Of a stretch of 64,000 bases of DNA, positions 14,395-48,791 are shown piece by piece. The position numbers were made by a program, and so were the translations under genes. The stretch lies in IMG/VR virus record IMGVR_UViG_3300033182_000674, positions 155,677 to 219,676 of that record; one strand, given 5' to 3'. Positions within the stretch are counted from its first letter, which is position 1, and each line of letters starts with the position of its first letter. The notes under the pieces were generated by a model. The model was not told the DNA's origin. It did no database searches and worked only from the letters and a program-made list of their open reading frames with translations.

Positions 14395-14402
14395 TATTTA
14401 TA
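14395..14402 (-). promoter_or_regulatory. T4-type late promoter TATAAATA
   Basis: Exact consensus on the minus strand in the intergenic gap, 50 nt upstream of the 4627-aa gene. Confidence 0.8.
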
Positions 14403-23601: not shown

Positions 23602-24000
23602 CTACGACACAGAGAAAAACTCTTCCTCATAATATTCTCTAATATCAGGTATCATTCCTTCCATTGGAATAGGAAAATCTATATTATCTAATAAAAATTC
23701 ATAAACTTCTGGGCTTTCATCATATGTTTTATAGTATGGATCATTACCATATAACAAATCGGGATCCATTAATAGATCCCTAAAGTCTTCTTGAAAATCT
23801 TGACTTATCCAATATGCATAACAAAAAGCAACAACATAACTTTTTGCTGGATATATCCATTCATCTACTCTTTCATAAAAATGCCGTAATGCATTATTCT
23901 TTAAATCATGTGATAAAGTAATTTCTATTTTATTTAGATCATCTTTAAAATAATGGTTTAATTTATGAAATACTTCTTGTCTTATTTTCCATTCTTGCAT
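23602..24000 (-). CDS. Hypothetical protein of the radical SAM cassette (132 aa)
   Basis: ORF overlapping the upstream rSAM gene by 38 nt; aromatic/acidic; no family recognised. Confidence 0.7.
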   Translation of the reverse strand: MQEWKIRQEVFHKLNHYFKDDLNKIEITLSHDLKNNALRHFYERVDEWIYPAKSYVVAFCYAYWISQDFQEDFRDLLMDPDLLYGNDPYYKTYDESPEVYEFLLDNIDFPIPMEGMIPDIREYYEEEFFSVS

Positions 24001-24898
24001 AATCTAATAATCCTTTGTAGCCATTACACGAATTAGTTAGGTCTGTTACATATCTATAATGTTCAGTTAAACAGTGTCCATAATATTCACATTGCTTACA
24101 TATTTCGCTTGTGTTTACTTCAGCTTCATTATCTGCCCATTTCAAATAATCATCAAATGAATCAAGCTCTAAGAAATATTCATTGTCATTCTTATCGAAT
24201 TCTAATACTGCAAATTTGCCATTTGGTGTAATATAAACATGATCATTTGAAAATGCATTATATGTTTTATTTAATGAATCTTCAATATGATATTCATTAA
24301 TAAATTCAAAGCTTTTTTCCACAGGACTTTCTAACCATTTAATAATAAAATCTTCAAAGTCTTTATGTGTTACATTTTGTTGATTAGCTTGATTAGTCGA
24401 ATATGGTTTTATTTCAACTGAAGTAATTGCTCTACACATATTTAATTGTGTAATCATATGATCAACATCCATTTGAATAACCTTTTCTGATGCTAATATA
24501 AGAACAGCAATTGGTACTTCAGACATAAACATATTATTAAATACTTTTTCACTTTGTTCTCTTGCATCGAAATCATATGATACTGATAACGTAATATCAT
24601 CATCAAAGAAAGGTTGATAAACTTTTGAGAAATTAGTATTAATATTAATTTTACCAGTATAATAATTTTTTATAACATTCTTTAACTGATAAAAATAAGA
24701 CTTAGGCATTGCTGTTATTTCTCCGCCATATAAATCTACGTGATCTATATTTGGAACTTGAGATAATAACTCATCTAATTGGCCTAAGTCTATTCGCTTT
24801 TGATCTTTTAATTGCTCAGGTGTTAAATAACAAAAATCACAATTGAAATTACAAAAATAACTTGGATTAATTGATAGATTCATATCTAATATACTCAT
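23963..24898 (-). CDS. Radical SAM protein with C-terminal Cys cluster (311 aa)
   Basis: NPSYFCNFNCDFCY (CxxxCxxC), LYGGE, C-terminal CKQCEYYGHCLTEH...C. Confidence 0.9.
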   Translation of the reverse strand: MSILDMNLSINPSYFCNFNCDFCYLTPEQLKDQKRIDLGQLDELLSQVPNIDHVDLYGGEITAMPKSYFYQLKNVIKNYYTGKININTNFSKVYQPFFDDDITLSVSYDFDAREQSEKVFNNMFMSEVPIAVLILASEKVIQMDVDHMITQLNMCRAITSVEIKPYSTNQANQQNVTHKDFEDFIIKWLESPVEKSFEFINEYHIEDSLNKTYNAFSNDHVYITPNGKFAVLEFDKNDNEYFLELDSFDDYLKWADNEAEVNTSEICKQCEYYGHCLTEHYRYVTDLTNSCNGYKGLLDYARMENKTRSIS

Positions 24899-25916
24899 TA
24901 ATATAAGGTGTTAATTCACGCTCAACTGCATTAGCTTCAAGAATCTTTGGAGCTAACTGTTTCATATGATAGCAATGATCTTCTACCATATTATGATTTT
25001 TTAAATCTTTAATTGTTTTCTTACAACCATTACATATCTCAAACATAGGACATGTGTAACATGCTTGTTTTAAACTACTTAATTCTAAACTATTCATTAA
25101 TGGTGTAAGAAACTCGCCATTCATTTCTCTTTCCCAATCAATGGCCATATCTCTATCATCGCCAAAAGCACCACACGTATAATAGTCACCTTCAGGCTGT
25201 ATAGTTCTTATACCAGCATCACATCCTCTATTTTGTGGACATACTGTTGGTTCACCTTGCAAACGTTTCATCATTTGCATTGTATTAAATTCCCATGAAG
25301 CTAATCCAGCTTCCCATATCTCAACATATTTTTCATATATTTTAGATAAGCGATATGGTTTATCTTGATCGCCACTTGACATTGCATAATTCAATTTACA
25401 TACAACATCCATTTCTTTTGCAAGTTCAACTGTACGTATAGCACTCCATTCATTTTCTTCTGTTATAACAGCAATAAAGTCTGGACGATAACCACAGTGT
25501 TCTAACATTGCATCTGATGCTTTCCAAAAGTCCGCTTCAGTAAATACTTTACCATCACCCATTAGTCTTCCTTTACCATATTGAAATGATGTACATACTC
25601 CAACTCGGGGGTGATTAAATAAATCAACCCATTTTTTTGGTTTAACAACAAATGGCCAAAGATTAGTTGTTAATGATATAGTGGCGTGTGAATCTACTTT
25701 GTCTAAATACTCAATAATCTTCCAATAATAACTTGGATGCATCATTAATGGATCTCCACCATTTACAATAATAGTATTTGTCTCTGGAAATCTATCGATA
25801 AATTGGTAGATACGATCTAGATCTAGTTCTGATGTATGATCATCAGCTATCTTAGTGCTTGAACAGAAAGTGCATTTAAAATTACACTTTTCTGTTGGTT
25901 TAATAATTAAGTCCAT
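24867..25916 (-). CDS. Radical SAM/SPASM protein (349 aa)
   Basis: KPTEKCNFKCTFCSS, NGGDPL, SPASM-like CPQNRGC...YYTC...CYTCPMFEICNGC...C. Confidence 0.92.
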   Translation of the reverse strand: MDLIIKPTEKCNFKCTFCSSTKIADDHTSELDLDRIYQFIDRFPETNTIIVNGGDPLMMHPSYYWKIIEYLDKVDSHATISLTTNLWPFVVKPKKWVDLFNHPRVGVCTSFQYGKGRLMGDGKVFTEADFWKASDAMLEHCGYRPDFIAVITEENEWSAIRTVELAKEMDVVCKLNYAMSSGDQDKPYRLSKIYEKYVEIWEAGLASWEFNTMQMMKRLQGEPTVCPQNRGCDAGIRTIQPEGDYYTCGAFGDDRDMAIDWEREMNGEFLTPLMNSLELSSLKQACYTCPMFEICNGCKKTIKDLKNHNMVEDHCYHMKQLAPKILEANAVERELTPYINEYIRYESIN

Positions 25917-26370
25917 CTATATCATACATAAAGTTGGCGACTATTCTTACATCATCTGTATGAATAACCTTGTGTTGAACGTTTGGTGCTTGGCTTAACA
26001 TAATTAAATCATATTTACTAGGTTGAATAATACCAGTTTTTTCATTATTCATTCTAACCATTAACTCACCATTATTTTTTATATCAGTCATATAATATAA
26101 AAAGAATATATTATAACCTTCTCTTAGATCATTATGCCATTCACATGTAGAATCTTCTGATCCTTTCCATATTGAATGATCTGTTTTATTATAATTACCA
26201 AAAAGCGGTATTACATACTTATCTACAATATATTTATTTGCTTCATTAATATCTATATTGAGCATTTCAAATTGATTATCGTTTACTTCTGGAACATCAA
26301 TAAAAGAATATAACTCCTTATCGATAGTTTGCGCATAACCTTTTATAATAAAATCACTAAAATCAATCAT
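25900..26370 (-). CDS. 2OG-Fe(II) oxygenase-like protein (156 aa)
   Basis: WHND (HxD), following IFFLYYM strand, GELMV, distal QHKV and RIVANF. Confidence 0.7.
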   Translation of the reverse strand: MIDFSDFIIKGYAQTIDKELYSFIDVPEVNDNQFEMLNIDINEANKYIVDKYVIPLFGNYNKTDHSIWKGSEDSTCEWHNDLREGYNIFFLYYMTDIKNNGELMVRMNNEKTGIIQPSKYDLIMLSQAPNVQHKVIHTDDVRIVANFMYDIDGLNY

Positions 26371-26851
26371 CTAATACTGCTTTAAAAGTAAATTTTAAAA
26401 GTTTTCTTGGAGAAGTATTTTCAAAGTTTGTTGCTCTATGTAAAACATCACCATTAAAGAATACTGCTCTTCCTTTTGCAATATTCACATTATGGATATT
26501 GCCGTTATAATCCTTTATTTCTAATGGATCTTCACAATCTTCTAAGTATACAACAACAGTAAAACTAACGTCAGGAATTTCTATATTATCTTCTTCTAAA
26601 TTATCTGGATGAAATTTATAAGAACCATAATCTAAATTATTCGCTAATAATTTTGCGGTACTTAATTTATATCTTTTACCAAGATAATCATTAATTTTTT
26701 CTATAACATAAAAAGCACTCGGTGGAATAATACAATCAGATCTTCCATCACCCCAACTCCAATCTTGAGTTTCATTGGCATATTCTTTAAATATAATATC
26801 GTCAACAAAATCGTCAACAACTTTCCATTCTGGATCAAATACTCTAATCAT
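26363..26851 (-). CDS. 2OG-Fe(II) oxygenase-like protein (162 aa)
   Basis: FHPD (HxD), SFTVVVYL, GRAVFFNGDVLHRA, RKLLKF (2OG-binding Arg). Confidence 0.8.
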   Translation of the reverse strand: MIRVFDPEWKVVDDFVDDIIFKEYANETQDWSWGDGRSDCIIPPSAFYVIEKINDYLGKRYKLSTAKLLANNLDYGSYKFHPDNLEEDNIEIPDVSFTVVVYLEDCEDPLEIKDYNGNIHNVNIAKGRAVFFNGDVLHRATNFENTSPRKLLKFTFKAVLDD

Positions 26852-27866
26852 TCATTTTATCTGCATATTTAAATGTTTCTTTATAAACACAACCATCAAA
26901 GTCACGTTCTAATCTTTTCCAATCATTTCTAACAAAACAACTAAATGGACATCTATTATAATATTCACAACTAAAGCAATCATGATCATTTAAAAACTTT
27001 TCAATAATTGCATCATTGGTATCAGATATTATAGTAATAAAGTCTTCGGTATCTTTATGTTGTCTTATTCTACAACTTGATGTCCTATTATCTGCTTCCA
27101 ATAATAATTTATTTACACTGGGACAACTCATTTTATTTAATGATGCGTTATTAGTAAAAGCAGATAAGTTAGTACATTCTGGATAATGATCTAAAAGGAA
27201 TATATTAAAATTATATAAGTCTCTCTCACTTGGAACAAGTGTATTTGGAACAGTAGGACCTGGTGTCAATTGATCCCAATAACATGGGAATAGACTATAG
27301 AGATAATCAAAATATTCATCACCATTATTTTGAAGGCGATACATACTTTGTTTAGTTGCAACAAGACATATTAAACTAATATGGTCCTTAAAAATTTCTA
27401 TATTTTCTTTGAATATTTTAAATTGTGCTGGATTAAATCTACCTGTTATATCATAACTTACACTTAATTTTAAATTATGTTTTTGTAGCCATTCAAGCAT
27501 AATAGATGTATTATCAAATACAAGATTACTTACAAAATTGAATGTTACAGACTTATCTAATTCATTACATAATTCATTTACACCATCTATAAATTCGTCA
27601 TAGATTGGTAGATATTCATCAAACAAATGATCTTGAAATAATTCGCCACCCATTATATTAAGAATATAATGATATTTGGTATTGGTATTAAAAAAGTCTC
27701 TTATTACATCAAGCTTGGAAAGTATTTGCTCTTTACTTTGACCAATTTTAGATTCATGATCTTGAAAGCAGTGTATACAACGTAAATTACATTCCTCAAA
27801 AAAGAATATTTCTAATTCTCCAGAGTCAGGTATTTTACTTTCTATAACACTTTGTAAATAACTCAT
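26844..27866 (-). CDS. Radical SAM protein with C-terminal Cys cluster (340 aa)
   Basis: FEECNLRCIHCFQ, MGGELF, C-terminal CPS...SSC...CFSCEYYNRCPFSC...C. Confidence 0.9.
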   Translation of the reverse strand: MSYLQSVIESKIPDSGELEIFFFEECNLRCIHCFQDHESKIGQSKEQILSKLDVIRDFFNTNTKYHYILNIMGGELFQDHLFDEYLPIYDEFIDGVNELCNELDKSVTFNFVSNLVFDNTSIMLEWLQKHNLKLSVSYDITGRFNPAQFKIFKENIEIFKDHISLICLVATKQSMYRLQNNGDEYFDYLYSLFPCYWDQLTPGPTVPNTLVPSERDLYNFNIFLLDHYPECTNLSAFTNNASLNKMSCPSVNKLLLEADNRTSSCRIRQHKDTEDFITIISDTNDAIIEKFLNDHDCFSCEYYNRCPFSCFVRNDWKRLERDFDGCVYKETFKYADKMND

Positions 27867-27883
27867 AATAAAAATAAATTAAT

Positions 27884-28933
27884 TTACTTAATTGTAAATT
27901 TAGCTAATTTATCTAATTCATCTTCTTGTTTAAGCGATCTAATATATGTAACAAATGGCAATACAATAGAACCACCTAGTGTAAATGGCAAATAGATTAA
28001 AGCAATTTTTTCATCTAAAATTTCTTGTAAAGCAGATTCAAACTCTTCATCTGTTAGTTCACCTTTATAAACCGAATCAAGATATTTAAACATCATTTCA
28101 GAAGAAATTGGTGATTGAATACCGGTTCCGCTTTGATTGAATGCCATATCACCATAAATTGCACTAGTAACTTTTTGTACAATATCAACGAGCTCTTTAA
28201 CTTCTTTTTCTGTACCATTAGATATATCTAATTTAGAACCAGCTCCACCAACATATGCTTTTCCAATCTCTATGCTTTTTCTGTTATTCCAACAATTATT
28301 AACAAATGGTTTCATACCAGGAAGCTCTTTATAGTTTTTAATAGTTTTCCCTGAGCCGCCTAATAATTCTTGTAAATCATTATCTAAAATTAATATATCA
28401 ATATGGCGACGACACTCTAAAATAGTATCTTCATATTCACGCTTAATCATTTTAGACATTAATGTTTTGAGTTTACTCTTATGGCTAGATCCAGAATCAG
28501 CAAACACAGATGCAATTAAAAATTCATATGAAGGCATATAATCAATATGACTATAATCTCCTTCTTCTGTATCTTCAAAAGAATCTTTCATAATTTGAGC
28601 TAATTGTGTATTTTGCTTTCCATACATTTCAAGTGTATGGTTATAACAATCAACCCATACATCAAATGAATCTTGATCAAAGTTTACGGTTGACTTAAGC
28701 CAATGAGTAGCAATTTGTGCAAAATGAAATGTATCAGCATAGATAGTAACTTTTTCATTCTTAGTAAAGCCAAGTTGAATAACTGATTGTGGTGTTAATG
28801 TTTCTGCCGCAGCAATTATAGATTTAGTATTATAAACATTACCACCATATTCTTTTGATACAACAATACAAGTGTCTAATGTATTAAGATAAGTATCTTG
28901 TTCTAAAAATACATTGTTAAATAAATGGATCAT
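27884..28933 (-). CDS. Hypothetical protein of the radical SAM cassette (349 aa)
   Basis: Long ORF with a 4-nt ATGA overlap with the upstream gene; no family recognised. Confidence 0.8.
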   Translation of the reverse strand: MIHLFNNVFLEQDTYLNTLDTCIVVSKEYGGNVYNTKSIIAAAETLTPQSVIQLGFTKNEKVTIYADTFHFAQIATHWLKSTVNFDQDSFDVWVDCYNHTLEMYGKQNTQLAQIMKDSFEDTEEGDYSHIDYMPSYEFLIASVFADSGSSHKSKLKTLMSKMIKREYEDTILECRRHIDILILDNDLQELLGGSGKTIKNYKELPGMKPFVNNCWNNRKSIEIGKAYVGGAGSKLDISNGTEKEVKELVDIVQKVTSAIYGDMAFNQSGTGIQSPISSEMMFKYLDSVYKGELTDEEFESALQEILDEKIALIYLPFTLGGSIVLPFVTYIRSLKQEDELDKLAKFTIK

Positions 28934-29637
28934 GCTTTTAGCTCCTGCATTGTTTGCAATTTATCAAACATTTTATGATAGTCTTCTATATCTAAACTAC
29001 CTGATGCCATACTATGTGTTAAAATAAACATTGGGTTGTTTCTATTTGCCCAATAACTAAATAAGTTTTTACCTTTAAAAATATATTCATTGAAAAACTT
29101 AGGATAATATCTTAGGTTATCTGATTTAGTTTTTTCAAGCAATGAATATAATGAATCTCTTTTTAATAAACTAACAAAATTAACACCTTTCATATCACCA
29201 TCATCTTCAGCAATTGGTGCATTTTCACTAAACTCTTTAAAAGTTTCGTCTTGAATTGAATGCATATTATATAGTGTTAAACTATCAATTCTTTGTTCCC
29301 AAATATCTAGTTCTTTAGAATACTGTTCTAATACATCTGAATCTATAACTGGAATAATACCTCTTTTTTGCATTAATAAATTAATAATAACTTCTTCAAG
29401 CAATGGTATATTAACTATCGATGTTGAGTTAAGATATACTCCAACCATTTCAACCAATTCATCTGGCTCAGTAATATTTAAATCACAAGGAATATCTAAA
29501 TTACTCAAATATGTAATAAGCTTTTCGCCTTTTAAATTTGAATCTTTATAGTTAATAATAAATTTAGTTTCTTTATCTTCAAAATATAGTTTCAACAAAT
29601 CTATGGAAATAGGTGCTGTTGTTTCAATAATATTCAT
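28930..29637 (-). CDS. Hypothetical protein of the radical SAM cassette (235 aa)
   Basis: GAGGAA Shine-Dalgarno right after the precursor stop; no family recognised. Confidence 0.8.
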   Translation of the reverse strand: MNIIETTAPISIDLLKLYFEDKETKFIINYKDSNLKGEKLITYLSNLDIPCDLNITEPDELVEMVGVYLNSTSIVNIPLLEEVIINLLMQKRGIIPVIDSDVLEQYSKELDIWEQRIDSLTLYNMHSIQDETFKEFSENAPIAEDDGDMKGVNFVSLLKRDSLYSLLEKTKSDNLRYYPKFFNEYIFKGKNLFSYWANRNNPMFILTHSMASGSLDIEDYHKMFDKLQTMQELKA

Positions 29638-29646
29638 AATTTCCTC

Positions 29647-30606
29647 TTATCTTCTGCCACGCGAACCATGACAAGAACTATGACAGCTCGAATGACAAAC
29701 ATCTGTTTGAATAGCTAAATCAGCTGTAGTAGATTGTGCAACCTGCTCCCAAGCGCTTTTTAGAGCATTAAAGTAATTTTCAAGTACACCTGCGGTTATA
29801 ACATAACCTTCTTCAACGCGCATAATCCCATTAATAGCATGTATTCCACCGGTCCAATTTGCTTTTACTTGTCCTACATCAGTTAAATATGAATCATCTA
29901 ATAATGCGTATTTGGTTTCATCAAATGCGATACCAGGATTAGCATAAGTTCCCTTATTTCCGCCTCCGCCAGTTACATTTAATTTAACATTCATTGTTCT
30001 AACACGAGTATATCTATTTGTTTCCCATAATATAGCTTTCCATATTACATATGCTGCAATTGGATTTTCTACTCGCTCAACAATCATATCACCTTGATCA
30101 TCTAAAATTGGTTCAATTGTTAAAATACCATCTGCTGCAGTATCTGCTTGTGCTTGAGCTTTAAATGCTTTTTCAACTGTTGAGAACTTCTCAGTTAAAC
30201 ATCTAGCATACCAATATTGTAAACCACCAATTTCAGCATCACGTTGTAAGTGTGTATTATATAACTTAGCTACTTTATCAACTAATGCTGGACCAGTACC
30301 AGTTTCATATAATAACCAGTCTTCTCTTGGACCATGCGGTAGTGGTCCGTCCCACATTGTAAGATATGTGCCATCTGATTTGCGTATTTTGGCTTTATAA
30401 AAAGTACCTAAAACAAACCAAGACCCATCACTTGGAATTACTTGAGTTATAGGTGTGCCCCAACCGCTAAAGGTAAATCCTTCATACGGTAAATTGTTAG
30501 CAGACCAGACATTAGGATCAGTATGAAAACTATAAACTGCTTTCGCATAATCTAAAAATCTTGGTACAATTTCTTCTTTTTTAACAGGATTAGTTAAACT
30601 CGCCAT
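29647..30606 (-). CDS. Putative modification substrate / precursor protein with C-terminal CHSSCHSSCHGSRGRR (319 aa)
   Basis: Directly downstream of and overlapping an rSAM/SPASM gene; terminal (C-H-x-S)x3 motif; internal DUF4214-like segment. The CDS is secure; the substrate role is inferred. Confidence 0.7.
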   Translation of the reverse strand: MASLTNPVKKEEIVPRFLDYAKAVYSFHTDPNVWSANNLPYEGFTFSGWGTPITQVIPSDGSWFVLGTFYKAKIRKSDGTYLTMWDGPLPHGPREDWLLYETGTGPALVDKVAKLYNTHLQRDAEIGGLQYWYARCLTEKFSTVEKAFKAQAQADTAADGILTIEPILDDQGDMIVERVENPIAAYVIWKAILWETNRYTRVRTMNVKLNVTGGGGNKGTYANPGIAFDETKYALLDDSYLTDVGQVKANWTGGIHAINGIMRVEEGYVITAGVLENYFNALKSAWEQVAQSTTADLAIQTDVCHSSCHSSCHGSRGRR

Positions 30607-31630
30607 TTTGTTTATCCAAATGAATCATTAATAGTTTAGGTGCAGGACAGACATCGCCTTCCCACGGTAATTGGTGGCAATCTCCACCACAATATTTAAA
30701 TACAGGACATGAAAAACATTTAGGATTTCTTCCTCGTTCTTCAGCTATATTTTGTAATCTTCTAGGACTATTTATAAGGTTTTCTATAGAATCGTTTATA
30801 TGACCAAATTGAAATGTTGGCGCAGAATTAGGACAACCTGAAATAGTACCAGTTGCATTAATGGTGAAGATCTTTTCTTCGCAATCTCTACAGAAAGTAC
30901 CACATGTATTTAATCCATTTTCAAACTTAGCATATACATCTTCAAGGAATGAATTTTCAAACCAATTTCTTGCACCAACTTCTTCTGATTGTAAATGCAT
31001 TTTTAAGAACCATTCATTAATTTCCATATTGGATGGGAATATATCTGGATGCTGATTTGCATTACCATCTCTTGTTAATCTTTCAAATGAAACTTCTTGA
31101 ACACCAAGCTCTTTACAAAACTCTAATACTTTAATTGGTTCCATGTTTATTAGTCCTTTTGTAACACTAATAAACATTCTAATTGTTACGCCACGTTTTA
31201 ATAATGATTTAACATTTTTATGCCATAGATTATATTGTCTATCATTATCAAATCGAATATCTGGATCCCATGATGTACCAATACGATTATTTAAACACTC
31301 TTCAATAAATGAATAATGCTCATCATACATTTTAAATGTTAAATTTGATGTAATGCCCCATGACATATCAAGCCATAAGTCTTTACACTCATTATAGACT
31401 TTACGCATTTCAGAGACATGAACAAGAAAAGGCTCACCACCATGAAATTCACAATGAGCCGTATCTAATAAATTAGGTCTATGTTGTCTAAAACGCTTTA
31501 ACCAATCTGCTATTTTATTTGGATTCCAATATTTCTTTGGACCGTTGATTCCATTCGTAAAGCAATGACGGCAATTAAGATTACACGTTTCAGTTGTCTT
31601 TAGGTAGAACATCCATTGCATCATCAGCAT
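30590..31630 (-). CDS. Radical SAM/SPASM protein (346 aa; start may be 31624)
   Basis: KTTETCNLNCRHCF, FHGGEPF, SPASM-like CGTFCRDC...SGC...CFSCPVFKYCGGDC...C; AAGGA lies 5 nt before ATG 31624. Confidence 0.92.
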   Translation of the reverse strand: MLMMQWMFYLKTTETCNLNCRHCFTNGINGPKKYWNPNKIADWLKRFRQHRPNLLDTAHCEFHGGEPFLVHVSEMRKVYNECKDLWLDMSWGITSNLTFKMYDEHYSFIEECLNNRIGTSWDPDIRFDNDRQYNLWHKNVKSLLKRGVTIRMFISVTKGLINMEPIKVLEFCKELGVQEVSFERLTRDGNANQHPDIFPSNMEINEWFLKMHLQSEEVGARNWFENSFLEDVYAKFENGLNTCGTFCRDCEEKIFTINATGTISGCPNSAPTFQFGHINDSIENLINSPRRLQNIAEERGRNPKCFSCPVFKYCGGDCHQLPWEGDVCPAPKLLMIHLDKQNGEFN

Positions 31631-32111
31631 CCTTTAGTTTGTTTTGTATAAAATTTTCAAGTCCAAAACTTAACATTAATGATTCATAGTAATTTGTTGC
31701 GCAATGAGGTGTGTTTGCTGGTATAAAAATAGATTCACCTTCATTTAATATAACTTCATCATTTCCAACAATTAATGTTTTAGTTCCTTCTACACAAAGC
31801 ATATAAACATCATCTGGATCTTTATGCATTGGAAATGAGTATGCATCTTTAGTTGCATAAAAAGCATGACATGTCACTGGACCATTATGTTCGTAATGTA
31901 ATGCTAATTCCTTACAATAATCAAATATCTCTTGATTATATTTTTCTAAACTTTCAATCTTTATAGTGGCGTGGCTATATTTTGATAATTCAAGAGAACT
32001 TTCAAGAACGGTATTTCTACCTTCATCATCTATAATAGACACAATCCTTTCTTCGTAAGGAATCAAATCTTTATTATATAATATTTCAACCAAATTGTAA
32101 ACTGAAAACAT
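31590..32111 (-). CDS. JmjC/cupin-type oxygenase (173 aa)
   Basis: SFPMHKDPDDVYMLCVEGTKTL and GESIFIPANTPHCA: HxD...H triad in a JmjC (YcfD/ROX-like) context. Confidence 0.85.
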   Translation of the reverse strand: MFSVYNLVEILYNKDLIPYEERIVSIIDDEGRNTVLESSLELSKYSHATIKIESLEKYNQEIFDYCKELALHYEHNGPVTCHAFYATKDAYSFPMHKDPDDVYMLCVEGTKTLIVGNDEVILNEGESIFIPANTPHCATNYYESLMLSFGLENFIQNKLKDADDAMDVLPKDN

Positions 32112-32125
32112 GACAAATTCTTTCG

Positions 32126-33235
32126 TTATAATTTAAGAATACATTCAACTAATTTTAAAGCTTCGCTATAATTATCTTCTAACGCAATACCAACTAATCT
32201 TCCAGTACCATTTACAGAAGCTATACCATTACTTGATACATATACACCTTCACCTTTCTTAACTGGATCAGTAACTTTAACAGGAACTCGACCAACTAGT
32301 GCAAGAGGTACACCACCTTCTAATTCACTATTCATAAGAACAGCTGGCTTTTCAGAGATAACACCCACAGGACACACTGTTGCATTGGCTGCGGTTACTT
32401 CTTTTTCTCCACCAACCATCATTACTGTACCAACTTCATATTCTTCATCTGGTAAATATTTCTCAGCCAAGTCAGCGTATTGAGCAAATTGAGCAACACC
32501 AGACATAAAGGTAATGTATGCATTAGAAAATGGACTACCGGCTGTACCGATTTGACGACCAGATCCTGATGCTTTAATATTGGCCGCCATTGTGACGTCA
32601 TCATTAAATGTTTTTAAGCTATTAATCGCTTGATTAACATCCGTATACACAACACCTGATGGCATTACCGCACGATCTAATTGCGCGCCTGATGTGGCAA
32701 TCTTACTAATTGGAATAGTAGGTAATAAAGCTAAATCAAATGTTTCACCAAAAGAAGCTGATGTTCTAGATGCAGGTAACGACGGAATAGTATTCAAATA
32801 TAGAACACCTGTGTCGATCCAACTCGCATCTAATAATGGAATTCTACCACGGCCTAATACACCAGAATTAATTTTATTTGCATCTAATGATGGAATTCTT
32901 AGTGGATCAAATTGACCAGTAGTAATTTTTGCTGCACTTAAACTAGGAATATCGGTTTCTTGTAATACATCACATGTATATGTAAAGACAGCATTAGATG
33001 GATCATATGTTAAATTACTATATGTTCCTTGACCATTTTTTGTAACAGTAAATAAGTTTTTCGCTTCGGTTTCAGTGATAAACTTAGTTTCCATTGAATT
33101 AATTGCGTCAACAATAGTAACATCAGTATCAGTAATTAGATTATCTAAATCACCAACCCATGTGCTAAGACAATTCGTCTTTTGACGCCATGCTTCTAGC
33201 GAATTACTTAAATCAACATATATCGTTCTAGCCAT
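32126..33235 (-). CDS. Fibre protein with C-terminal peptidase G2-like autoproteolytic chaperone (369 aa)
   Basis: LEAWRQKTN N-terminus, IPSLDANKINSG repeats, C-terminal YADLAEKY...GVISEKPAVLMN...ALVGRVPVKV...KGEGVYVS...VGIALED. Confidence 0.75.
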   Translation of the reverse strand: MARTIYVDLSNSLEAWRQKTNCLSTWVGDLDNLITDTDVTIVDAINSMETKFITETEAKNLFTVTKNGQGTYSNLTYDPSNAVFTYTCDVLQETDIPSLSAAKITTGQFDPLRIPSLDANKINSGVLGRGRIPLLDASWIDTGVLYLNTIPSLPASRTSASFGETFDLALLPTIPISKIATSGAQLDRAVMPSGVVYTDVNQAINSLKTFNDDVTMAANIKASGSGRQIGTAGSPFSNAYITFMSGVAQFAQYADLAEKYLPDEEYEVGTVMMVGGEKEVTAANATVCPVGVISEKPAVLMNSELEGGVPLALVGRVPVKVTDPVKKGEGVYVSSNGIASVNGTGRLVGIALEDNYSEALKLVECILKL

Positions 33236-33458
33236 TCTGATGTACCTTTTGAATTAATTCCTTAAGAAGATCTTTAATTTCTCCAACCTCTGTTTTTAAA
33301 TTTTCAAGATCTTGTTTTTCTTGTTTCCTAGCTTGTTTAATTTCCTTTAATCTATCTATTTCAGATTGATTATCACATAATATAGCATTTGTTTTAGGAT
33401 CACGATATAAACCACTATGATCCTTGACTGGTATTAACCTATCACGTATATCACTCAT
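33228..33458 (-). CDS. Conserved small hypothetical protein of T4-like phages (76 aa)
   Basis: Track start 33476; ATG at 33458 follows the DUF4815 stop (TAA-T-ATG); LYRDPKTNAIL motif plus coiled-coil C-terminus. Confidence 0.7.
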   Translation of the reverse strand: MSDIRDRLIPVKDHSGLYRDPKTNAILCDNQSEIDRLKEIKQARKQEKQDLENLKTEVGEIKDLLKELIQKVHQNG

Positions 33459-33459
33459 A

Positions 33460-36400
33460 TTAATTTGCCAATGCAATTGCTCTTAAATCTCTTACCACTG
33501 GTACTTTACCCATAGTAGTTGAAGTAAAGACTAGTTTTAATTGGAAGGTATCAAAATCATCAAGTGTTCCATCAACACCACCAATTGTATATTCATAGTC
33601 TCTGAAAATATTTTTATTTTCATCTGATGGTACTAACGAATCAGGTGTTGCTAATGTCCACTCTTTCTCATAAATACCGTCTGAACCTTGAGTTGTTCTA
33701 TAATAGACATCCATTCTACATACAGAAGGTCTGTTTGCAGCAATCAAAACTTTTAAACCACTTGCATTATTCAATAATGATACTGGTTTAGTTATGTGTT
33801 TAGCTGCTGCTGAACCACCTGTTGCAGAAGTTTCTGGTACAAAACCAATAACTTCATTATATCCATTACCTGTTCCTGGATTATCTATAACATTTTCAAT
33901 CATAGTTAAACTTGCACGTTGCATATCAACAACAGGTGAAACATATTTGTTAGACGATGTCATATTAACTGTAACAATCGCAGACTTAGATACCGCATTA
34001 TAAGATGCAGGATTTTCTTGACCTCTATCTCTAATTACTCTTGGATAATTGTCTAATGGATTATCTTCATTATTAATTAAACTAAAGTGTTCAGTTGGAT
34101 CTTGCGCATATAAACTTTCTTGACCAGCATATGATTGAGTCGAAGTAAACTGACCTTTTAAATTATATGCAGAGCCAGTTGGTTCCAATACAGCAATTGC
34201 TGGTTGAACAGAATTGAATGCAAAACATTGTGTTACAACAACCGAGTTACCACCAACAGGTGTAGGAGCAATAGGACTAGGTGGTGTGACACTAAATCCA
34301 GCAGGCTTATCAATTGTATAACCTGTATGATCTACTTTAACAATAGTATGATCATCATTCAATGCATTTAATCCAGATATAACAGAATTATCAACACCGT
34401 CAATTGTTACAGTATTACCAACTTGGAATCCATGTCCTGGATGTAAAATCTTGATATATTGAGGATTTGTTTCAGTTGGATCATCATCCCACCATAATAC
34501 AATAGGATCAAATTGTAATAACTTACGAGGAGGAGAATGATTAACAAGAACAGCTTTACCTGATGCATTATCACCAAAGTTTGCTTTGTGTAAATCAAAC
34601 TTAAGATCTTCCCACTGTAATGCTTCCCAAGTCGATGCATTTTGAGATTTAAATAATGAACCATAGAATGCTTGCTTAGAAATTCTCTTTTCAGTTGTTC
34701 CTAATTCAAACTCACCAACTTTAGACATCCATACTTTATATGCTGGTGTTACAGTTTGAACCATAACTGCATATTCAGTATTACCTTTAAGATATACTGG
34801 CTCATCAAATTCAAAGTCAGTACCAACAGTAGCATCTGCTGAAGTAACAACATCACTAGACTGTAATAGCTTATATGAACCAGGAAGAATATCAGTAGAT
34901 GAAGGATAACCATTAACCATTGGTCTTAGTTGTACCCATACTGGATTTTCATCTTTAGATTCAAAATAAACAGTAACTTTAGTTGCAAACATACCTGCAG
35001 GATCTGTTACTTTAAATGATTGTGCAATTGGATCGCCACCATCACCGTCACCTGGATCAGGTTGGAAGTTAGTCCAATTAACAGAACTTTCAACAACAGA
35101 TGTTTCTACACCAGTTACTTCTAAATGACGAGTTGAAAGAATATCTTTTTGACGTGTATGTAAATAACCAGTTGAAGTAAAGATAGTCTTTGCTTTACTA
35201 ATTGCATCTTTTTCTTTAGGTATAGAAATATCTAATAATTTAAATTCATTCTCACCTGTTCTAAATCTTCTAGTATTATTATTAGGAATAAAGAAGACAC
35301 CTTCAACAGTACCTTGAGCATCAGTATATAGTTCATCAGCTCCACCAGGAATTGCTTGAGCTAAGTCATAAATATTACCTGGTTCAATCTTATCTGCGTC
35401 AATATTAGCATTCATCATTTCAATTGCTTTACGAGAGAATGATTCTCTTCTACACCAAGATGAAACATCAGCATTATCAAAGAATGGCCACACTCTAGTG
35501 TTAGGCATTAAGCCTTCACCTTTAAATGAAACATAGCGTGATCTCATAAATGGAATTAAGTCAACACTTACTTCACGATCACCAATTTCTTCATGTACAA
35601 TATTAGAACTTGTAATTGTATTAACAACTGTTGTAACAGTATCATCTCTCCACGATGTTGTGCGAGTACCACCGCCTTCTCTGTTACTTGTTTGTCTATT
35701 GGTACTACCAGTAACATGAGTTTGACTAACAGAGTCACCTACACTTAATTGATTCGGATCTACGCCGTGCCAGTTAAAGTTCCAATCATTCCATCTTAAT
35801 GCACCTTCGTAATGAACAACTGTGCCATTATCAATAATGTTTGGATCCATGTACTCTGTAACATGCCATGTATCAGATGCTGGTGATAATGTAATATGAC
35901 CAGGATAATCTAATGTCATATATGGATTAACTTGAATAGTCGAGTTTGCTTGATCATGTGAGATCGCAACTTCTTCAGTATAATCTAAATAAACATTATC
36001 ACCTTTAAGTACAGTATTAGATGATAGGTTTGGTTCAAAATATAAACCAATATGCTTTGATAGATATCCAGGACGAACGTTCTTATTTAGAATATCAATA
36101 GACGCTCTATATTCAGGATTTCTTGTATCTGCATTATATCCTGATGCAAAATTATCAACAAAGAAACCAGACTTAGCTCTATTACGGCCATCAGCATCCA
36201 ATACATCAATATTTTTAGTATCTAATTCTAATAATGATAATGCTGTTGTTCTTTCGATTTGAGTAATTCTCTTATCCAATTTACCGATATCACGCATCGT
36301 ATAACGACGATTATCGATCATTGTATAATCTACATAATCAGGACCAGAAACATTACCTGGCATATCAATAGTATATAATGCCATTGAGTTATCTGGCGTT

Positions 36401-46753: not shown

Positions 46754-48787
46754 TTATTCAGGTATTACTTCCACTAGATCGTTAGGACTTTGAATTTTAC
46801 CATTAAACATTGTTTGAATTTGCATATCAAAGTTGCCAGCATAATCTTCACCGATTTCTGGTCCAACTACTACAATTTGACCATTCATCTTCTTATCAGG
46901 ATCAAACTCATCATAGAATAAAATAATCTTTTGATATGATGCATTGTCCTTTAAGTATACAGCTAATTCATATAGTTTCTCAAAGTCTTGCTCACCTGTT
47001 GCATCATATAATTCATATGCAACAACACGACCTTTCATCGCAAGATCTTTTAATCCACCACTTTCAATATTTTCTGCATCATTATCTTTCTTATATAAAC
47101 CTTCCGCAACAACTAAATTATATCGATCAAACTTTTTAGTTCCATTAAATAATTTAAGTATACTTACTTGCGTAATAAGATTACGTGCTATTGATTTTCT
47201 TTCATCTTGATTAGTAATATGATCTAATGTAAATGAATCACCATATGAAGATACAAATTTAGAAAGAGGAATACCAGGTCCTAAACTTGTTTGTAATGTA
47301 ATCTTATCCATATGATTAGGATTATAATACGGATCAGGTAAGATATTTCTTACTCTTGCTTTTGCTGCCATTTGAGGTGGTTTATACTTCTTAAGACCAA
47401 CAACAGTTTTACCACCAACACCTAATCCAGTATTACCCATTGTTACTGTTGATGATGCACCTCTAATCTTACCAACTTTACTTGGTGTTGGATTAGTATA
47501 ACCTGCATTTAAAACACCATCTTTAATTAATTGAGAAGTGTATTTACTATTACTCAAATGATTATTATCTTTTAGTCTAGATCTAGCTTCTCTTGTATTA
47601 TGTGGTCTAGATGTAACATTATCTGTATTGACCTTTAAATCAATTGCATTTAATAAGCCATCATTTTCATCTACTCTTACCTCACGAATACCACCTTGTG
47701 ATTCATGTAAATATGATTGTAAAATAGATTTAGTAGGTTTAGATGTTTTCTTACCATCAGGTGAATGACCCTGTGATGGATGAGATCTACCACCGCCACC
47801 TAGTCCACCAGCAACTGCTGACCAACCAGCAGTGTTTGCATCACCATTTAAGCTACCATGAAACTCAATTGTTTTCATACTCTTAGCCGCAGTTACTGTT
47901 TCACAATTAACTTCATGTCCAACATAAGTATTATAAGAATACATGATAATGTTTTCACCGCCAATAGTTCCAGTATTACCAAACACTGATAAACTTTGTG
48001 CTGCAATATTCATATCTTCAGATGATATTTGTATTTTAGTTTCAGATGTTATATTAGTATCATGTGAATGTAAATAGTTTGCTTCGCCATTTACATGGTG
48101 TCTAAATGTATTTTTTACAAATGAATTGAATCCATCTAAATAAGTATGAGATACCATTTTAAGTACAGTTGATGATTTAGTCTTTTGTATAATTTCACTT
48201 AATACACCAACAATTCTTTTTCTATATGATCCCATTACATTCACAAGCCAGTTACCACCAACTCGCATTTTCATATCACCTTTAACATCAAGATCATAAT
48301 CACCATTAACAGTCATCTTTAAATTACCATAATAAGTAACACAACCATCGCCTTCAACAGATAACTTATGATCTCCATTAACAACATCAACTCTATTATT
48401 TAATGCATTAACAACAATTGTTCCATCAGGTTTAATTTCGATACCTGCACCATTATTATGCATAATTAAAATACGATCACCACCAGGTGTATCATTCATT
48501 TCAAATACATGGCCGCTTGGTGTTTCATCTATTTGTACATATGGATATTTAGAAATTGTATGTGGTTTAACACCAAGATCGCAGCCTGGTGTACCATTTG
48601 TAATATTTAAATTCTTTACTTCTAAACCACGAGCAGCTTTACTTAATGATGATTCACCACCATAATTTGTCTTTGGATATTTTAATTCAGGATCATTAAA
48701 ACCTTCTTTAGGCCGACCTGTATTAGAAGCAGTTGCTTTACCAACTTTATTTTCTCTAGCTATTAAATCATTATCTGTAATTGACAT
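46754..48787 (-). CDS. gp5 C-terminal part (beta-helix needle) with additional C-terminal domain (677 aa)
   Basis: KYPYVQIDETPSGHVFEMNDTPGGDRILIMHNNG...IEIKPDG, followed by 8-residue VxGD-type repeats. Confidence 0.8.
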   Translation of the reverse strand: MSITDNDLIARENKVGKATASNTGRPKEGFNDPELKYPKTNYGGESSLSKAARGLEVKNLNITNGTPGCDLGVKPHTISKYPYVQIDETPSGHVFEMNDTPGGDRILIMHNNGAGIEIKPDGTIVVNALNNRVDVVNGDHKLSVEGDGCVTYYGNLKMTVNGDYDLDVKGDMKMRVGGNWLVNVMGSYRKRIVGVLSEIIQKTKSSTVLKMVSHTYLDGFNSFVKNTFRHHVNGEANYLHSHDTNITSETKIQISSEDMNIAAQSLSVFGNTGTIGGENIIMYSYNTYVGHEVNCETVTAAKSMKTIEFHGSLNGDANTAGWSAVAGGLGGGGRSHPSQGHSPDGKKTSKPTKSILQSYLHESQGGIREVRVDENDGLLNAIDLKVNTDNVTSRPHNTREARSRLKDNNHLSNSKYTSQLIKDGVLNAGYTNPTPSKVGKIRGASSTVTMGNTGLGVGGKTVVGLKKYKPPQMAAKARVRNILPDPYYNPNHMDKITLQTSLGPGIPLSKFVSSYGDSFTLDHITNQDERKSIARNLITQVSILKLFNGTKKFDRYNLVVAEGLYKKDNDAENIESGGLKDLAMKGRVVAYELYDATGEQDFEKLYELAVYLKDNASYQKIILFYDEFDPDKKMNGQIVVVGPEIGEDYAGNFDMQIQTMFNGKIQSPNDLVEVIPE

Positions 48788-48791
48788 TAGA

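What the first reader, a model, noticed from the sequence alone, without database searches (positions are those of the whole stretch)
29647..29697. Terminal C-H-S-S-C-H-S-S-C-H-G-S-R-G-R-R motif conserved at protein level, not by DNA slippage
The codons are TGT CAT TCG AGC / TGT CAT AGT TCT / TGT CAT GGT TCG. The Ser codons differ in each unit, so selection acts on the peptide. The motif is at once a His-Xaa-Ser triple repeat (as in HxsA-type rSAM substrates) and a CxxxCxxxC pattern (as in Cys-repeat ranthipeptide-type substrates), followed by a basic tail. It is the most likely core peptide, with one site per repeat.
Basis: partly seen in the sequence, partly recalled or inferred. Interest (0 to 1): 0.85.

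Follow-up and report, generated by a model that had tools for sequence, protein, structure and literature searches.

The report
Phage virion protein with radical-SAM tag
A large phage carries a particle protein whose last 16 amino acids (three Cys-His-x-Ser units plus Arg-Gly-Arg-Arg) are kept almost unchanged across hundreds of very different phages. The gene always sits among four to six radical SAM enzyme genes, which points to an undescribed enzyme-driven maturation of a phage structural protein.

Summary
Window 29650-29697 (-) encodes CHSSCHSSCHGSRGRR, followed directly by the stop codon. It is the C-terminus of a 319-aa ORF (29647-30606), not a small peptide.

- **Conservation:** across 63 distinct DNA versions, Cys x3, His x3, Ser4 and Arg13/15/16 never change, while codons vary freely. 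The rest of the protein is 30-45% identical or unalignable.
- **Family size:** 767 clusters at 50% identity, essentially all from phages.
- **Gene context:** the gene always lies in a co-directional cassette: fibre, JmjC-like cupin, rSAM_D, CH-tail, g235, (g349), rSAM_C, rSAM_B, 2OG oxygenase(s), rSAM_A, g132. A second, very diverged cassette type has tandem tail genes and five or six radical SAM genes. No tail gene was found without radical SAM neighbours.
- **Expression and location:** the gene has its own conserved T4-type late promoter. Its Agrobacterium phage Atu_ph07 homolog (gp170) is a virion protein that runs far above its 32-kDa size on SDS gels.

Best reading (about 0.55): the tail is the substrate tag of the radical SAM/SPASM enzymes on a fibre-associated virion protein. 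It resembles the bacterial HXS system and anSME in logic but fails every membership test for HxsA, ranthipeptide, CXXX-repeat and anSME families. The chemistry is unknown. It is a new variant of a known kind, and interest is high.

The parts
29650..29697 (-). Invariant 16-residue C-terminal tag C-H-x-S-C-H-x-S-C-H-x-S-R-G-R-R; the stop codon is at 29647-29649
29647..30606 (-). CH-tail protein, 319 aa. It has a family core (N-terminal helix, ETNRYTRxR...NVTGGGGN hairpin, C-terminal helix and strand) plus a ~125-aa insertion that typical ~190-aa members lack
   Evidence: only the tail matches phrog_35144
30769..30776 (-). T4-type late promoter motif TATAAATA inside rSAM_D, 163 nt upstream of the CH-tail start codon
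   Evidence: The placement is conserved: 54 of 66 distinct loci have the motif within 400 nt upstream, against 0.43 expected per 50-nt bin
30590..31630 (-). rSAM_D: radical SAM/SPASM enzyme with CxxxCxxC at residues 16-23 and nine further Cys. Its 3' end overlaps the CH-tail start by 17 nt
31590..32111 (-). Cupin / JmjC-like (PF07883, PF08007) putative protein oxygenase
   Evidence: present in 70 of 80 loci
32126..33235 (-). Fibre protein with a Peptidase_G2-type C-terminal intramolecular chaperone domain; it heads the cassette
33228..33476 (-). 82-aa protein of phrog_473 (annotated virion structural protein)
   Evidence: present in 40 of 80 loci
28930..29637 (-). g235: cassette-specific protein of unknown fold (phrog_20767), directly downstream of the CH-tail gene
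   Evidence: present in 79 of 80 loci; AF2 pLDDT 90; no PDB fold match; matches only its own orthologs in BFVD
27884..28933 (-). g349: conserved unknown protein with no radical SAM motif
26844..27866 (-). rSAM_C: radical SAM/SPASM enzyme with CxxxCxxC at residues 26-33
26363..26851 (-). g162: probably a 2OG-Fe(II) oxygenase-like protein. It is labelled phrog_274, but its DT01 homolog is annotated PF13759
25900..26370 (-). 2OG-Fe(II) oxygenase-like protein (weak matches)
   Evidence: present in 49 of 80 loci
24867..25916 (-). rSAM_B: the most conserved radical SAM/SPASM enzyme (53-59% identical to RSF1, DT01 and Atu_ph07). It aligns full-length to anSME
23963..24898 (-). rSAM_A: radical SAM enzyme with a four-Cys (twitch-like) C-terminus. 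Its nearest solved relative is the peptide epimerase YydG
23602..24000 (-). g132: small conserved protein (phrog_20737) that closes the cassette

Best explanation
The 319-aa ORF encodes a late-expressed, fibre- or baseplate-associated virion protein. Its body evolves fast. Its last 16 residues, (Cys-His-x-Ser)x3-Arg-Gly-Arg-Arg, form a fixed tag.

The tag is most likely the recognition and reaction site for the four co-encoded radical SAM enzymes (A-D), three or four of which carry SPASM or twitch auxiliary-cluster domains. These would abstract peptidyl C-H hydrogens at the Cys/Ser/His positions, giving thioether or other cross-links, formylglycine-type oxidation, epimerisation, or a small carbon-bridging change like the +8 Da change in HxsA. 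The JmjC-like cupin and the 2OG-Fe(II) oxygenases may add hydroxylations, for example on the Arg or His residues. g235, g349 and g132 would be accessory or chaperone-like partners. The matured tail then gives the virion protein a covalent or very stable linkage or surface chemistry that it needs in the particle.

Shown: the motif; its purifying selection; strict co-occurrence and synteny with the enzymes in two cassette types; the gene's own late promoter; and virion presence with anomalous high-molecular-weight migration of one homolog.

Inferred: that the tail, rather than another protein, is the substrate; which residues are modified; the chemistry; and the role in the particle.
For: 1. Tail invariance under heavy synonymous change and always at the extreme C-terminus. 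The body is 30-45% identical, or unalignable between lineages.
2. The enzymes are far more conserved than the body across T4-like, phiKZ-like (RSF1), Rak2-like (Atu_ph07) and DT01 phages: rSAM_B 53-59%, rSAM_D 40-48%, rSAM_A 43-52%.
3. Co-occurrence. 49 of 53 loci are complete. The same 15 of 50,697 phage records carry rSAM_D and g235, and the tail protein is present in each cassette inspected among them. All 18 apparent exceptions in a body-independent scan carry a diverged rSAM cassette that has a g235 homolog wherever the fetched stretch reaches that far.
4. The genes are tightly packed and overlap.
5. All four enzymes have CxxxCxxC at residues 11-33 and C-terminal Cys clusters. The SPASM model is above cut-off for rSAM_D. 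The nearest solved relatives are peptide- or protein-modifying enzymes: anSME full-length, CteB and YydG. The core starts at about residue 10 as in anSME, which acts on proteins, so there is no RRE.
6. The CH-tail gene has a conserved late promoter of its own.
7. Atu_ph07 gp170 (tail FCHSSCHASCHNSRSRR) is in purified virions with 8 peptides and 35% coverage. It is most abundant in gel band 1, whereas other 30-32 kDa proteins peak in bands 7-8. None of the cassette enzymes is in the virion list (PMC6102473).
8. 127 of 174 distinct family members have no Cys outside the tail.
9. Precedent: bacterial HxsA is a ~214-aa protein with HxS repeats that is covalently matured by two radical SAM enzymes (PMC13128918).
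Against: There are no mass-spectrometric or biochemical data on the tail itself. Guilt by association cannot exclude another substrate, such as the adjacent fibre protein.

Three Cys plus three His with i/i+4 spacing is also a good metal-ligand set.

The Atu_ph07 gel buffer as described contained no reducing agent. The high-molecular-weight species could therefore be plain disulfides or SDS-resistant oligomers.

In the RSF1 record the homolog is annotated only as hypothetical, while a neighbouring gene is called a virion structural protein.

Four to six enzymes for a 16-residue tag is more than any known peptide maturation needs.

The AF2 model of the protein is of modest confidence (pLDDT 62.8) and has no fold match.
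Confidence: 0.55

Rival explanations
1. The tail is an unmodified metal-binding or disulfide-forming module. For example, Cys3/His3 layers in a trimer could bind Zn or Fe, in the way the His-x-His iron sites work in the T4 gp37 fibre tip; or it could ligate an Fe-S cluster. On this reading the radical SAM enzymes act on something else (the fibre protein, another virion protein or a small molecule), or they help build a metal cluster on the tail.
For: Three Cys and three His sit at fixed i/i+4 spacing, and they are the only Cys in most members. The gene lies next to fibre genes. The high-molecular-weight species was seen in a gel run without a listed reductant. That T4 fibres bind metal through His motifs is established knowledge and was not tested here.
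Against: This does not explain the invariant Ser4, the near-invariant Ser8/Ser12 and the R-G-R-R end. It also does not explain why four to six distinct radical SAM orthologs and g235 track the tail through two cassette types and unrelated phage lineages while the body diverges. No other conserved short motif was noticed in the cassette alignments that were made (A2-A8).
Confidence: 0.2
2. It is a classical RiPP: the ~170-300 aa body is an oversized leader, and the modified 16-mer is cut off and released as a bioactive peptide or cofactor, as in the PQQ or mycofactocin logic.
For: SPASM enzymes lie next to a Cys-rich repeat at the C-terminus, as in MftA or PqqA-type systems (one search lists weak similarity to many RiPP maturases). 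Oxygenases are present in the cassette.
Against: There is no recognisable protease, exporter or RRE domain in about 200 loci. The body is a structured, conserved domain within lineages. It is found in virions with 35% coverage. It has a late structural-type promoter.
Confidence: 0.07
3. The protein is a phage-borne analogue of, or counter-measure to, the bacterial HXS defence. The matured, basic H-x-S tail would act in the periplasm at the DNA-entry step, for example by shielding or guiding the phage's own DNA, competing with HxsA, or excluding superinfecting phages. This concerns the biological role and is compatible with the best explanation for the chemistry.
For: The logic is shared with HXS: a protein effector, H-x-S units, basic residues and more than one radical SAM maturase. 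The protein is in the virion. The cultured hosts are all Pseudomonadota, the phylum that holds 99.7% of HXS systems.
Against: There is no sequence homology to HxsA, HxsB, HxsC or HxsD at curated thresholds. No peptidoglycan-binding domain or signal peptide was detected. The Cys residues are absent from the HxS motif. The gene context is fibre and baseplate rather than ejected internal proteins.
Confidence: 0.1

Closest known systems
Bacterial HXS anti-phage system (HxsA effector matured by rSAM enzymes HxsB and HxsC with HxsD; PMC13128918)
   Same: The substrate is a ~200-aa protein, not a short peptide. It has short His-x-Ser units in a basic context. More than one radical SAM enzyme and small accessory proteins are encoded alongside. 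HxsA carries a covalent modification on an S-H-x-S-S unit.
   Different: No homology at curated thresholds. There are three units, not five. Each unit begins with an invariant Cys. The motif is at the extreme C-terminus. There is no peptidoglycan-binding domain. It has four to six rSAMs plus cupin and 2OG oxygenases. It is phage-encoded and virion-associated rather than a periplasmic host defence effector.
Anaerobic sulfatase-maturating enzyme (anSME) acting on the C/S-x-P/A-x-R motif of sulfatases
   Same: rSAM_B aligns full-length to anSME, and rSAM_D also matches it. The architecture is the same: the core starts at about residue 10, there is no RRE, and there is a SPASM domain with 7-8 Cys. 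It acts on a full-size protein. The third tail unit, C-H-[GST]-S-R, loosely resembles C-x-P/A-S-R.
   Different: Scores are about 40 bits against a 349-bit cut-off. Position +2 is mostly Gly, Ser or Thr (Ala in only 5 of 174 members) and never Pro. Units 1 and 2 have Cys rather than Arg at +4. There is no sulfatase domain.
Ranthipeptide, SCIFF and CXXX-repeat maturases (PapB, CteB, TIGR04115) and the peptide epimerase YydG
   Same: SPASM or twitch radical SAM enzymes act on Cys-rich periodic motifs. PapB is the best NCBIfam hit for rSAM_D, CteB is among its PDB hits, and YydG is the best PDB hit for rSAM_A.
   Different: There is no RRE domain, no short leader/core precursor, no Asp or Glu acceptor in the tail, and scores are far below the cut-offs.
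QhpD/QhpC (rSAM/SPASM cross-linking of the quinohemoprotein amine dehydrogenase gamma subunit)
   Same: A SPASM enzyme installs several Cys-based thioether links in a protein subunit that stays part of a larger complex. rSAM_D shows weak similarity to TIGR03906.
   Different: The score is 29 bits against a 453-bit cut-off. QhpC is a small Cys/Asp/Glu-rich subunit. There is no phage context.
T2/S16-type gp38 adhesin and T4 gp37 fibre tip (an analogy by position and function only)
   Same: A small, fast-evolving protein with a Gly-rich loop is encoded directly after a long fibre gene. This is clearest in the type-2 cassettes, fibre then CH-tail x2. Fibre tips are known to bind metal through His motifs.
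   Different: No sequence or fold similarity was detected. gp38 has no Cys-His tail and no radical SAM partners.

Membership tests
HXS system (HxsA/B/C/D) | Effector homologous to HxsA (TIGR03979) | tested here: not met
   NCBIfam scans of the full protein and of the 30-residue tail gave no family even at E<=10
HXS system (HxsA/B/C/D) | Five HxS repeats plus a peptidoglycan-binding domain and N-terminal processing/export (PMC13128918) | tested here: not met
   There are three H-x-S units, at the extreme C-terminus, each preceded by Cys. The protein has no Pfam domain. Processing cannot be tested here
HXS system (HxsA/B/C/D) | HxsB (TIGR03978) and HxsC (TIGR03977) radical SAM pair above curated cut-offs | tested here: not met
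   rSAM_D scores 33.2 bits against HxsB (cut-off 370). rSAM_B scores 32.1 bits and rSAM_A 15.8 bits against HxsC (cut-off 267.9)
HXS system (HxsA/B/C/D) | Small partner HxsD | tested here: not met
   g132, g82, g235 and g349 gave no HxsD hit at E<=1
HXS system (HxsA/B/C/D) | rSAM-dependent covalent modification of an H-x-S unit | not testable with these tools
   This needs mass spectrometry of the tail
Ranthipeptide / SCIFF / CXXX-repeat RiPPs | Maturase in the PapB (NF047865), CXXX-repeat (TIGR04115) or related equivalog families | tested here: not met
   PapB 43.6 bits against cut-off 340; TIGR04115 20.3 bits against cut-off 350
Ranthipeptide / SCIFF / CXXX-repeat RiPPs | Short precursor with a leader, and an RRE domain in or beside the maturase | tested here: not met
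   Tail-bearing proteins are 102-364 aa. CxxxCxxC begins at residues 11-26, so there is no N-terminal RRE. The alignment to CteB starts at its residue 101 but at residue 7 of rSAM_D. g235 has no RRE-like fold match
Ranthipeptide / SCIFF / CXXX-repeat RiPPs | Cys donors paired with Asp/Glu (or other) acceptors at fixed spacing | tested here: not met
   The tail contains no Asp or Glu at any position in 174 distinct proteins
Anaerobic sulfatase maturase (anSME) and its substrate | Enzyme above the TIGR03942 cut-off | tested here: not met
   39.4 and 40.2 bits against cut-off 349, although the PDB profile alignment to anSME is full-length for rSAM_B
Anaerobic sulfatase maturase (anSME) and its substrate | Substrate motif C/S-x-P/A-x-R (established knowledge) | tested here: inconclusive
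   The third unit is C-H-[G/S/T/N]-S-R with Arg invariant at +4, but position +2 is Ala in only 5 of 174 members and never Pro. Units 1 and 2 have Cys at +4
Radical SAM superfamily with SPASM/twitch domain | CxxxCxxC cluster motif and a C-terminal auxiliary-cluster Cys motif | tested here: met
   All four enzymes have CxxxCxxC at residues 11-33 and 4-9 C-terminal Cys. The SPASM model TIGR04085 scores 35.8 bits against cut-off 27 for rSAM_D and 24.6 for rSAM_B. Pfam Radical_SAM scores 36.5 against 29.5 for rSAM_B
Virion structural protein | Detected in purified particles | tested here: met
   This holds for the Atu_ph07 homolog gp170 only: 8 unique peptides, 35.16% coverage (Table S5 of PMC6102473). 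It was not tested for the window's own phage

The most novel reading that the evidence does not exclude
Large myoviruses use a dedicated set of four to six radical SAM enzymes, with Fe(II) oxygenases, to install covalent modifications on a universal 16-residue Cys-His-Ser tag of a fibre-associated virion protein. These may be cross-links to itself or to the fibre. This would be the first radical-SAM-matured structural protein of a virus. It would mirror, on the phage side, the radical-SAM-matured HxS effector that bacteria use to block phage DNA entry.
Probability: 0.45. Interest if true: 0.88.

Novelty: new variant of a known kind. Interest (0 to 1): 0.78.

Why it matters
Clusters of radical SAM genes in big phages have been noted as a puzzle since 2010, for example in the Campylobacter phages CP220/CPt10 (a different cluster, which lacks this cassette; PMC2853527) and in T4-like marine genomes (PMC5332604). 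They have usually been read as metabolic genes. For this cassette, the present analysis supplies a concrete, testable substrate: an invariant tag on a virion protein.

If confirmed, this would add post-translational radical chemistry to the known ways of building a phage particle. It would define a new substrate/enzyme family (767 substrate clusters at 50% identity, four enzyme orthogroups and three unknown partners, one of which, g235, has a confidently predicted fold with no PDB match). It would also provide a short portable tag with dedicated enzymes that could interest protein engineers. Finally, it offers a phage-side counterpart to the recently described HXS defence system.

Tried and rejected
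- **HxsA, CXXX-repeat, SCIFF or other curated substrate family.** No NCBIfam hit for the protein or the tail, even at E<=10.
- **g235 or g349 as degenerate radical SAM paralogs.** Suggested by the beta-alpha pattern and a weak SuiB fold hit. hhalign against the rSAM_D family gave probability 0.2% and 0.1%, so this was rejected.
- **g235 as an RRE/PqqD-like domain.** No Pfam signal in 17 members, no PDB sequence hit and no PDB fold hit. BFVD returns only its own orthologs.
- **Fold of the CH-tail protein.** AF2 pLDDT was 62.8, and there was no PDB match (best E=1.1).
- **Tails without rSAM neighbours.** The 18 candidate loci all resolved into a diverged cassette or had too little flank.
- **Bacterial origin.** Only 3 hits in 185,579 species genomes, all MAG contigs; two carry radical SAM cassette genes, and the third (L084) shows only a fibre gene and two tail genes on a short contig.
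- **Anti-phage defence membership.** PADLOC gave only generic rSAM-core hits to viperins.
- **Heme c-type CX3CH reading.** Considered and dropped: no signal peptide or Ccm context. This was not formally tested.
- **Sigma-70 promoters and terminators in the cassette.** Not above chance.
- **Literature.** No paper mentions the motif or assigns a function to the cassette.
- **Near-identical DNA, or the 319-aa protein by tblastn, in INPHARED.** No match. BLAST's low-complexity filter masks the tail.
Full report
**1. What is there**

The reverse complement of window 29647-29697 reads C-H-S-S-C-H-S-S-C-H-G-S-R-G-R-R-stop. These are the last 16 residues of a 319-aa ORF at 29647-30606 on the minus strand. 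The finding is therefore not a small peptide gene.

The window is the baseplate and tail-fibre module of a T4-like myovirus. It has gp25-, gp6-, gp8-, gp5-, gp48- and gp53-like genes, several fibre genes, and giant ORFs of 1543, 1817 and 4627 aa, all on the minus strand from 462 to 54253. It comes from a 219,676-bp IMG/VR contig.

**2. Is it more than chance, and is it DNA slippage?**

- The degenerate DNA pattern for three Cys-His pairs spaced by two codons occurs once in the window and in none of 100 shuffles. CH..CH occurs nowhere else in the six frames.
- TRF sees only a sub-threshold 12-nt periodicity.
- The strong evidence is comparative. An alignment of 35 homologs that are otherwise 29-44% identical has C304, H305, S307, C308, H309, S311, C312, H313, S315, R316, R318 and R319 invariant.
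- In 80 IMG/VR loci there are 63 different DNA versions of the tail. Both Cys codons, both His codons and both serine codon families are used at Ser4 (33 AGY, 30 TCN). Yet C, H, S4 and R13/15/16 never change, and the stop codon always follows directly.
- Those loci were retrieved through tail-derived patterns. As a control I looked at the 190 proteins returned by the two protein searches: 48 from the word-indexed search and 142 more from the exhaustive HMMER search. That search finds 767 clusters at 50% identity, 422 of them at E<=1e-10. Of the 190 proteins, 179 end in the exact pattern. The rest are truncated or close variants, for example with one extra Gly before RxRR, or with two CH units.
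- 127 of 174 distinct members have no cysteine outside the tail.

**3. Neighbourhood**

The ORF sits in a tightly packed, co-directional block with overlaps of 4-41 nt or gaps of at most 17 nt:

| Coordinates (-) | Gene |
|---|---|
| 32126-33235 | fibre protein with Peptidase_G2-type C-terminal chaperone |
| 31590-32111 | cupin / JmjC-like |
| 30590-31630 | rSAM_D |
| 29647-30606 | CH-tail |
| 28930-29637 | g235 |
| 27884-28933 | g349 |
| 26844-27866 | rSAM_C |
| 26363-26851, 25900-26370 | two 2OG-oxygenase-like ORFs |
| 24867-25916 | rSAM_B |
| 23963-24898 | rSAM_A |
| 23602-24000 | g132 |

These assignments rest.

All four rSAMs have CxxxCxxC at residues 11-33 and C-terminal Cys clusters: seven to nine Cys in B, C and D, and four in A. 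They are only 20-28% identical to each other, so they are old, distinct paralogs. They have no N-terminal RRE extension.

Their nearest solved relatives are all peptidyl C-H-activating enzymes. rSAM_D matches 8vpo, anSME and CteB. rSAM_B aligns to anSME over its full length. rSAM_A matches the epimerase YydG.

g235 gives a confident model (pLDDT 90) with no PDB fold match, and only its own orthologs appear among viral models. g349 and g132 have no detectable relatives of known function.

**4. Co-occurrence**

- The same gene order is found in the 80 IMG/VR loci. Of the 53 with at least 2 kb upstream and 9.5 kb downstream, 49 have all four rSAM orthologs, g235 and the cupin.
- Among 50,697 GenBank phage records, the same 15 records carry both rSAM_D and g235: the RSF1/RSL2/FLC/S13 group, Pseudomonas phage DT01, Agrobacterium phage Atu_ph07 and Sinorhizobium phage Phosso. 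The tail protein was confirmed in each cassette I inspected, namely the 11 RSF1-group records, DT01 and Atu_ph07.
- These phages belong to unrelated lineages (T4-like, phiKZ-related, Rak2-like). Between the window and these phages the enzymes are 40-59% identical, while the CH-tail protein aligns only over its last ~55 residues.
118 contain a tail ORF, and 23 contain two in tandem.
- Eighteen of those loci seemed to lack rSAM genes. They turned out to carry a second cassette type: fibre, two short CH-tail genes (126-140 aa), a 400-423-aa rSAM, a 367-aa ORF, a g235 homolog (profile E about 1e-9) and three or four more rSAMs.
- Every one of these 18 loci with more than about 500 bp downstream has a CxxxCxxC ORF right after the tail gene, except L197. 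There, g235 and g349 homologs fill the 1.6 kb before the contig ends.
- I therefore found no tail without radical SAM neighbours.
- The family is essentially phage-only. There are three hits in 185,579 species genomes, all MAG contigs. Two carry radical SAM cassette genes. The third, an 11.9-kb contig, shows only a fibre gene and two tail genes.

**5. Expression and location**

The T4 late-promoter motif TATAAATA is depleted in the window (8 sites against 15.7 in shuffles), and six of the eight lie within 50 nt upstream of gene starts. One lies inside rSAM_D, 163 nt upstream of the CH-tail start.

This placement is conserved. 54 of 66 distinct loci have the motif within 400 nt upstream: 37 at 150-249 nt and 17 at 0-49 nt, against 0.43 expected per bin. 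The substrate-like gene thus has its own late promoter, separate from the enzyme genes upstream.

In Atu_ph07 the homolog gp170 (296 aa, tail FCHSSCHASCHNSRSRR, no other Cys) was detected in purified virions with 8 unique peptides and 35% coverage. It was found in gel bands 1-9 and was most abundant in band 1. Other 30-32 kDa proteins peak in bands 7-8, and bands 1-2 hold 117-137 kDa proteins. The cassette enzymes gp165, gp168, gp169, gp171 and gp172 are not in the virion list (PMC6102473).

The sample buffer as described had SDS and 95 C heating but no reducing agent. The large species may therefore be disulfide-linked, otherwise covalently linked, or an SDS-resistant oligomer.

One family member, P0071, is fused to a Gly-rich fibre-like N-terminal region.

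**6. Interpretation**

The pattern is a fast-evolving body, a frozen 16-residue C-terminal tag, a frozen set of protein-modifying radical SAM enzymes that follow the tag through two cassette architectures and several phage lineages, a late promoter, and presence in the virion. It is best explained by a virion protein whose tail is the substrate of these enzymes.

The chemistry cannot be read from sequence. Candidates are Cys-based thioethers, anSME-like oxidation of Cys or Ser (the third unit C-H-G-S-R loosely resembles C-x-P/A-S-R), epimerisation (YydG-like rSAM_A), or a small carbon-bridging change as reported for HxsA. The JmjC-like cupin (PF08007 above cut-off) and the 2OG oxygenases may hydroxylate the Arg or His residues.

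The main rival is that the Cys/His array simply binds metal or forms disulfides and that the enzymes have another substrate. That reading does not account for the invariant Ser and Arg positions or for the co-inheritance. A classical released RiPP is unlikely: there is no recognisable protease, exporter or RRE, and the body is found in virions.

**7. Comparison with what is known**

A 2026 study shows that HxsA is a ~214-aa protein effector with five basic HxS repeats. It is matured by the rSAM enzymes HxsB and HxsC with HxsD, carries a +8 Da change on an S-H-R-S-S unit, and blocks phage DNA entry in the periplasm (PMC13128918).

The phage system shares that logic but fails every membership test:
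- no HxsA, HxsB, HxsC or HxsD homology at curated cut-offs;
- three Cys-led units rather than five HxS repeats;
- C-terminal position of the motif;
- no peptidoglycan-binding domain.

It also fails the ranthipeptide, CXXX-repeat and anSME equivalog thresholds, and it has no acidic acceptor residues.

No paper in the searched library mentions the motif or assigns a function to the cassette. Earlier genome papers only list the cupin, radical SAM and 2OG genes, or remark that so many radical SAM genes in a phage is unusual.

**8. Verdict**

It is a new variant of a known kind, namely radical-SAM maturation of a protein carrying short repeats, in a new setting (a phage structural protein), with unknown chemistry. 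Interest is 0.78.

Noticed in passing
window 462-14345 (-): A 4627-aa ORF, the largest in the window, with a TATAAATA late-promoter motif 50 nt upstream (14395-14402). It was not annotated here.
   Followed up: no
window 46754-51241 (-): The gp5-like baseplate hub appears split into two ORFs (50396-51241 and 46754-48787, both matching phrog_430). An amidase-domain ORF (48792-50399, phrog_822) lies between them.
   Followed up: no
window, whole: TATAAATA is depleted overall (8 sites against 15.7 in shuffles). Six of the eight sites lie within 50 nt upstream of ORF starts, which fits a T4-type late promoter.
   Followed up: partly
L084:9195-10030; also L087, L140, L172 and L174: A second cassette type has two tandem short CH-tail genes (126-140 aa) directly after a long fibre gene, followed by five or six very diverged radical SAM genes with a C...CPGC motif.
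   Followed up: partly
L086:8068-8958 (Atu_ph07 gp170): In published virion proteomics, the 31.9-kDa homolog is most abundant in the top gel band, among proteins of 117 kDa and above. The sample buffer listed no reducing agent.
   Followed up: partly
window 26363-26851 (-): g162 matches phrog_274, which is labelled 'DNA endonuclease V'. Its DT01 homolog is annotated as a 2OG-Fe(II) oxygenase (PF13759), so the PHROG label is probably misleading here.
   Followed up: partly
L083, L084, L085: Three GTDB MAGs (Bdellovibrionaceae UBA2316, Rhodobacteraceae Water_Bin34, Marinovum MED682) hold contigs with CH-tail genes. L083 and L085 also carry the radical SAM cassette genes. They are probably phage contigs binned into bacterial MAGs.
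   Followed up: partly
L081:7571-8641 (RSF1 ORF072): The RSF1 group has an extra 356-aa gene of unknown function between the CH-tail gene and the g235 homolog. The g235 homolog there is 357 aa, with an N-terminal extension.
   Followed up: no
P0071, P0098, P0131, P0146, P0188: Rare variants of the family. One is fused to a 270-aa Gly-rich fibre-like N-terminus (P0071). Others have tails with only two CH units or with an interrupted unit.
   Followed up: no
window 29647-30606, residues ~55-180: The window's own CH-tail protein carries a ~125-aa insertion that typical 190-aa members lack. The insertion is predicted at low confidence as two long helices.
   Followed up: no
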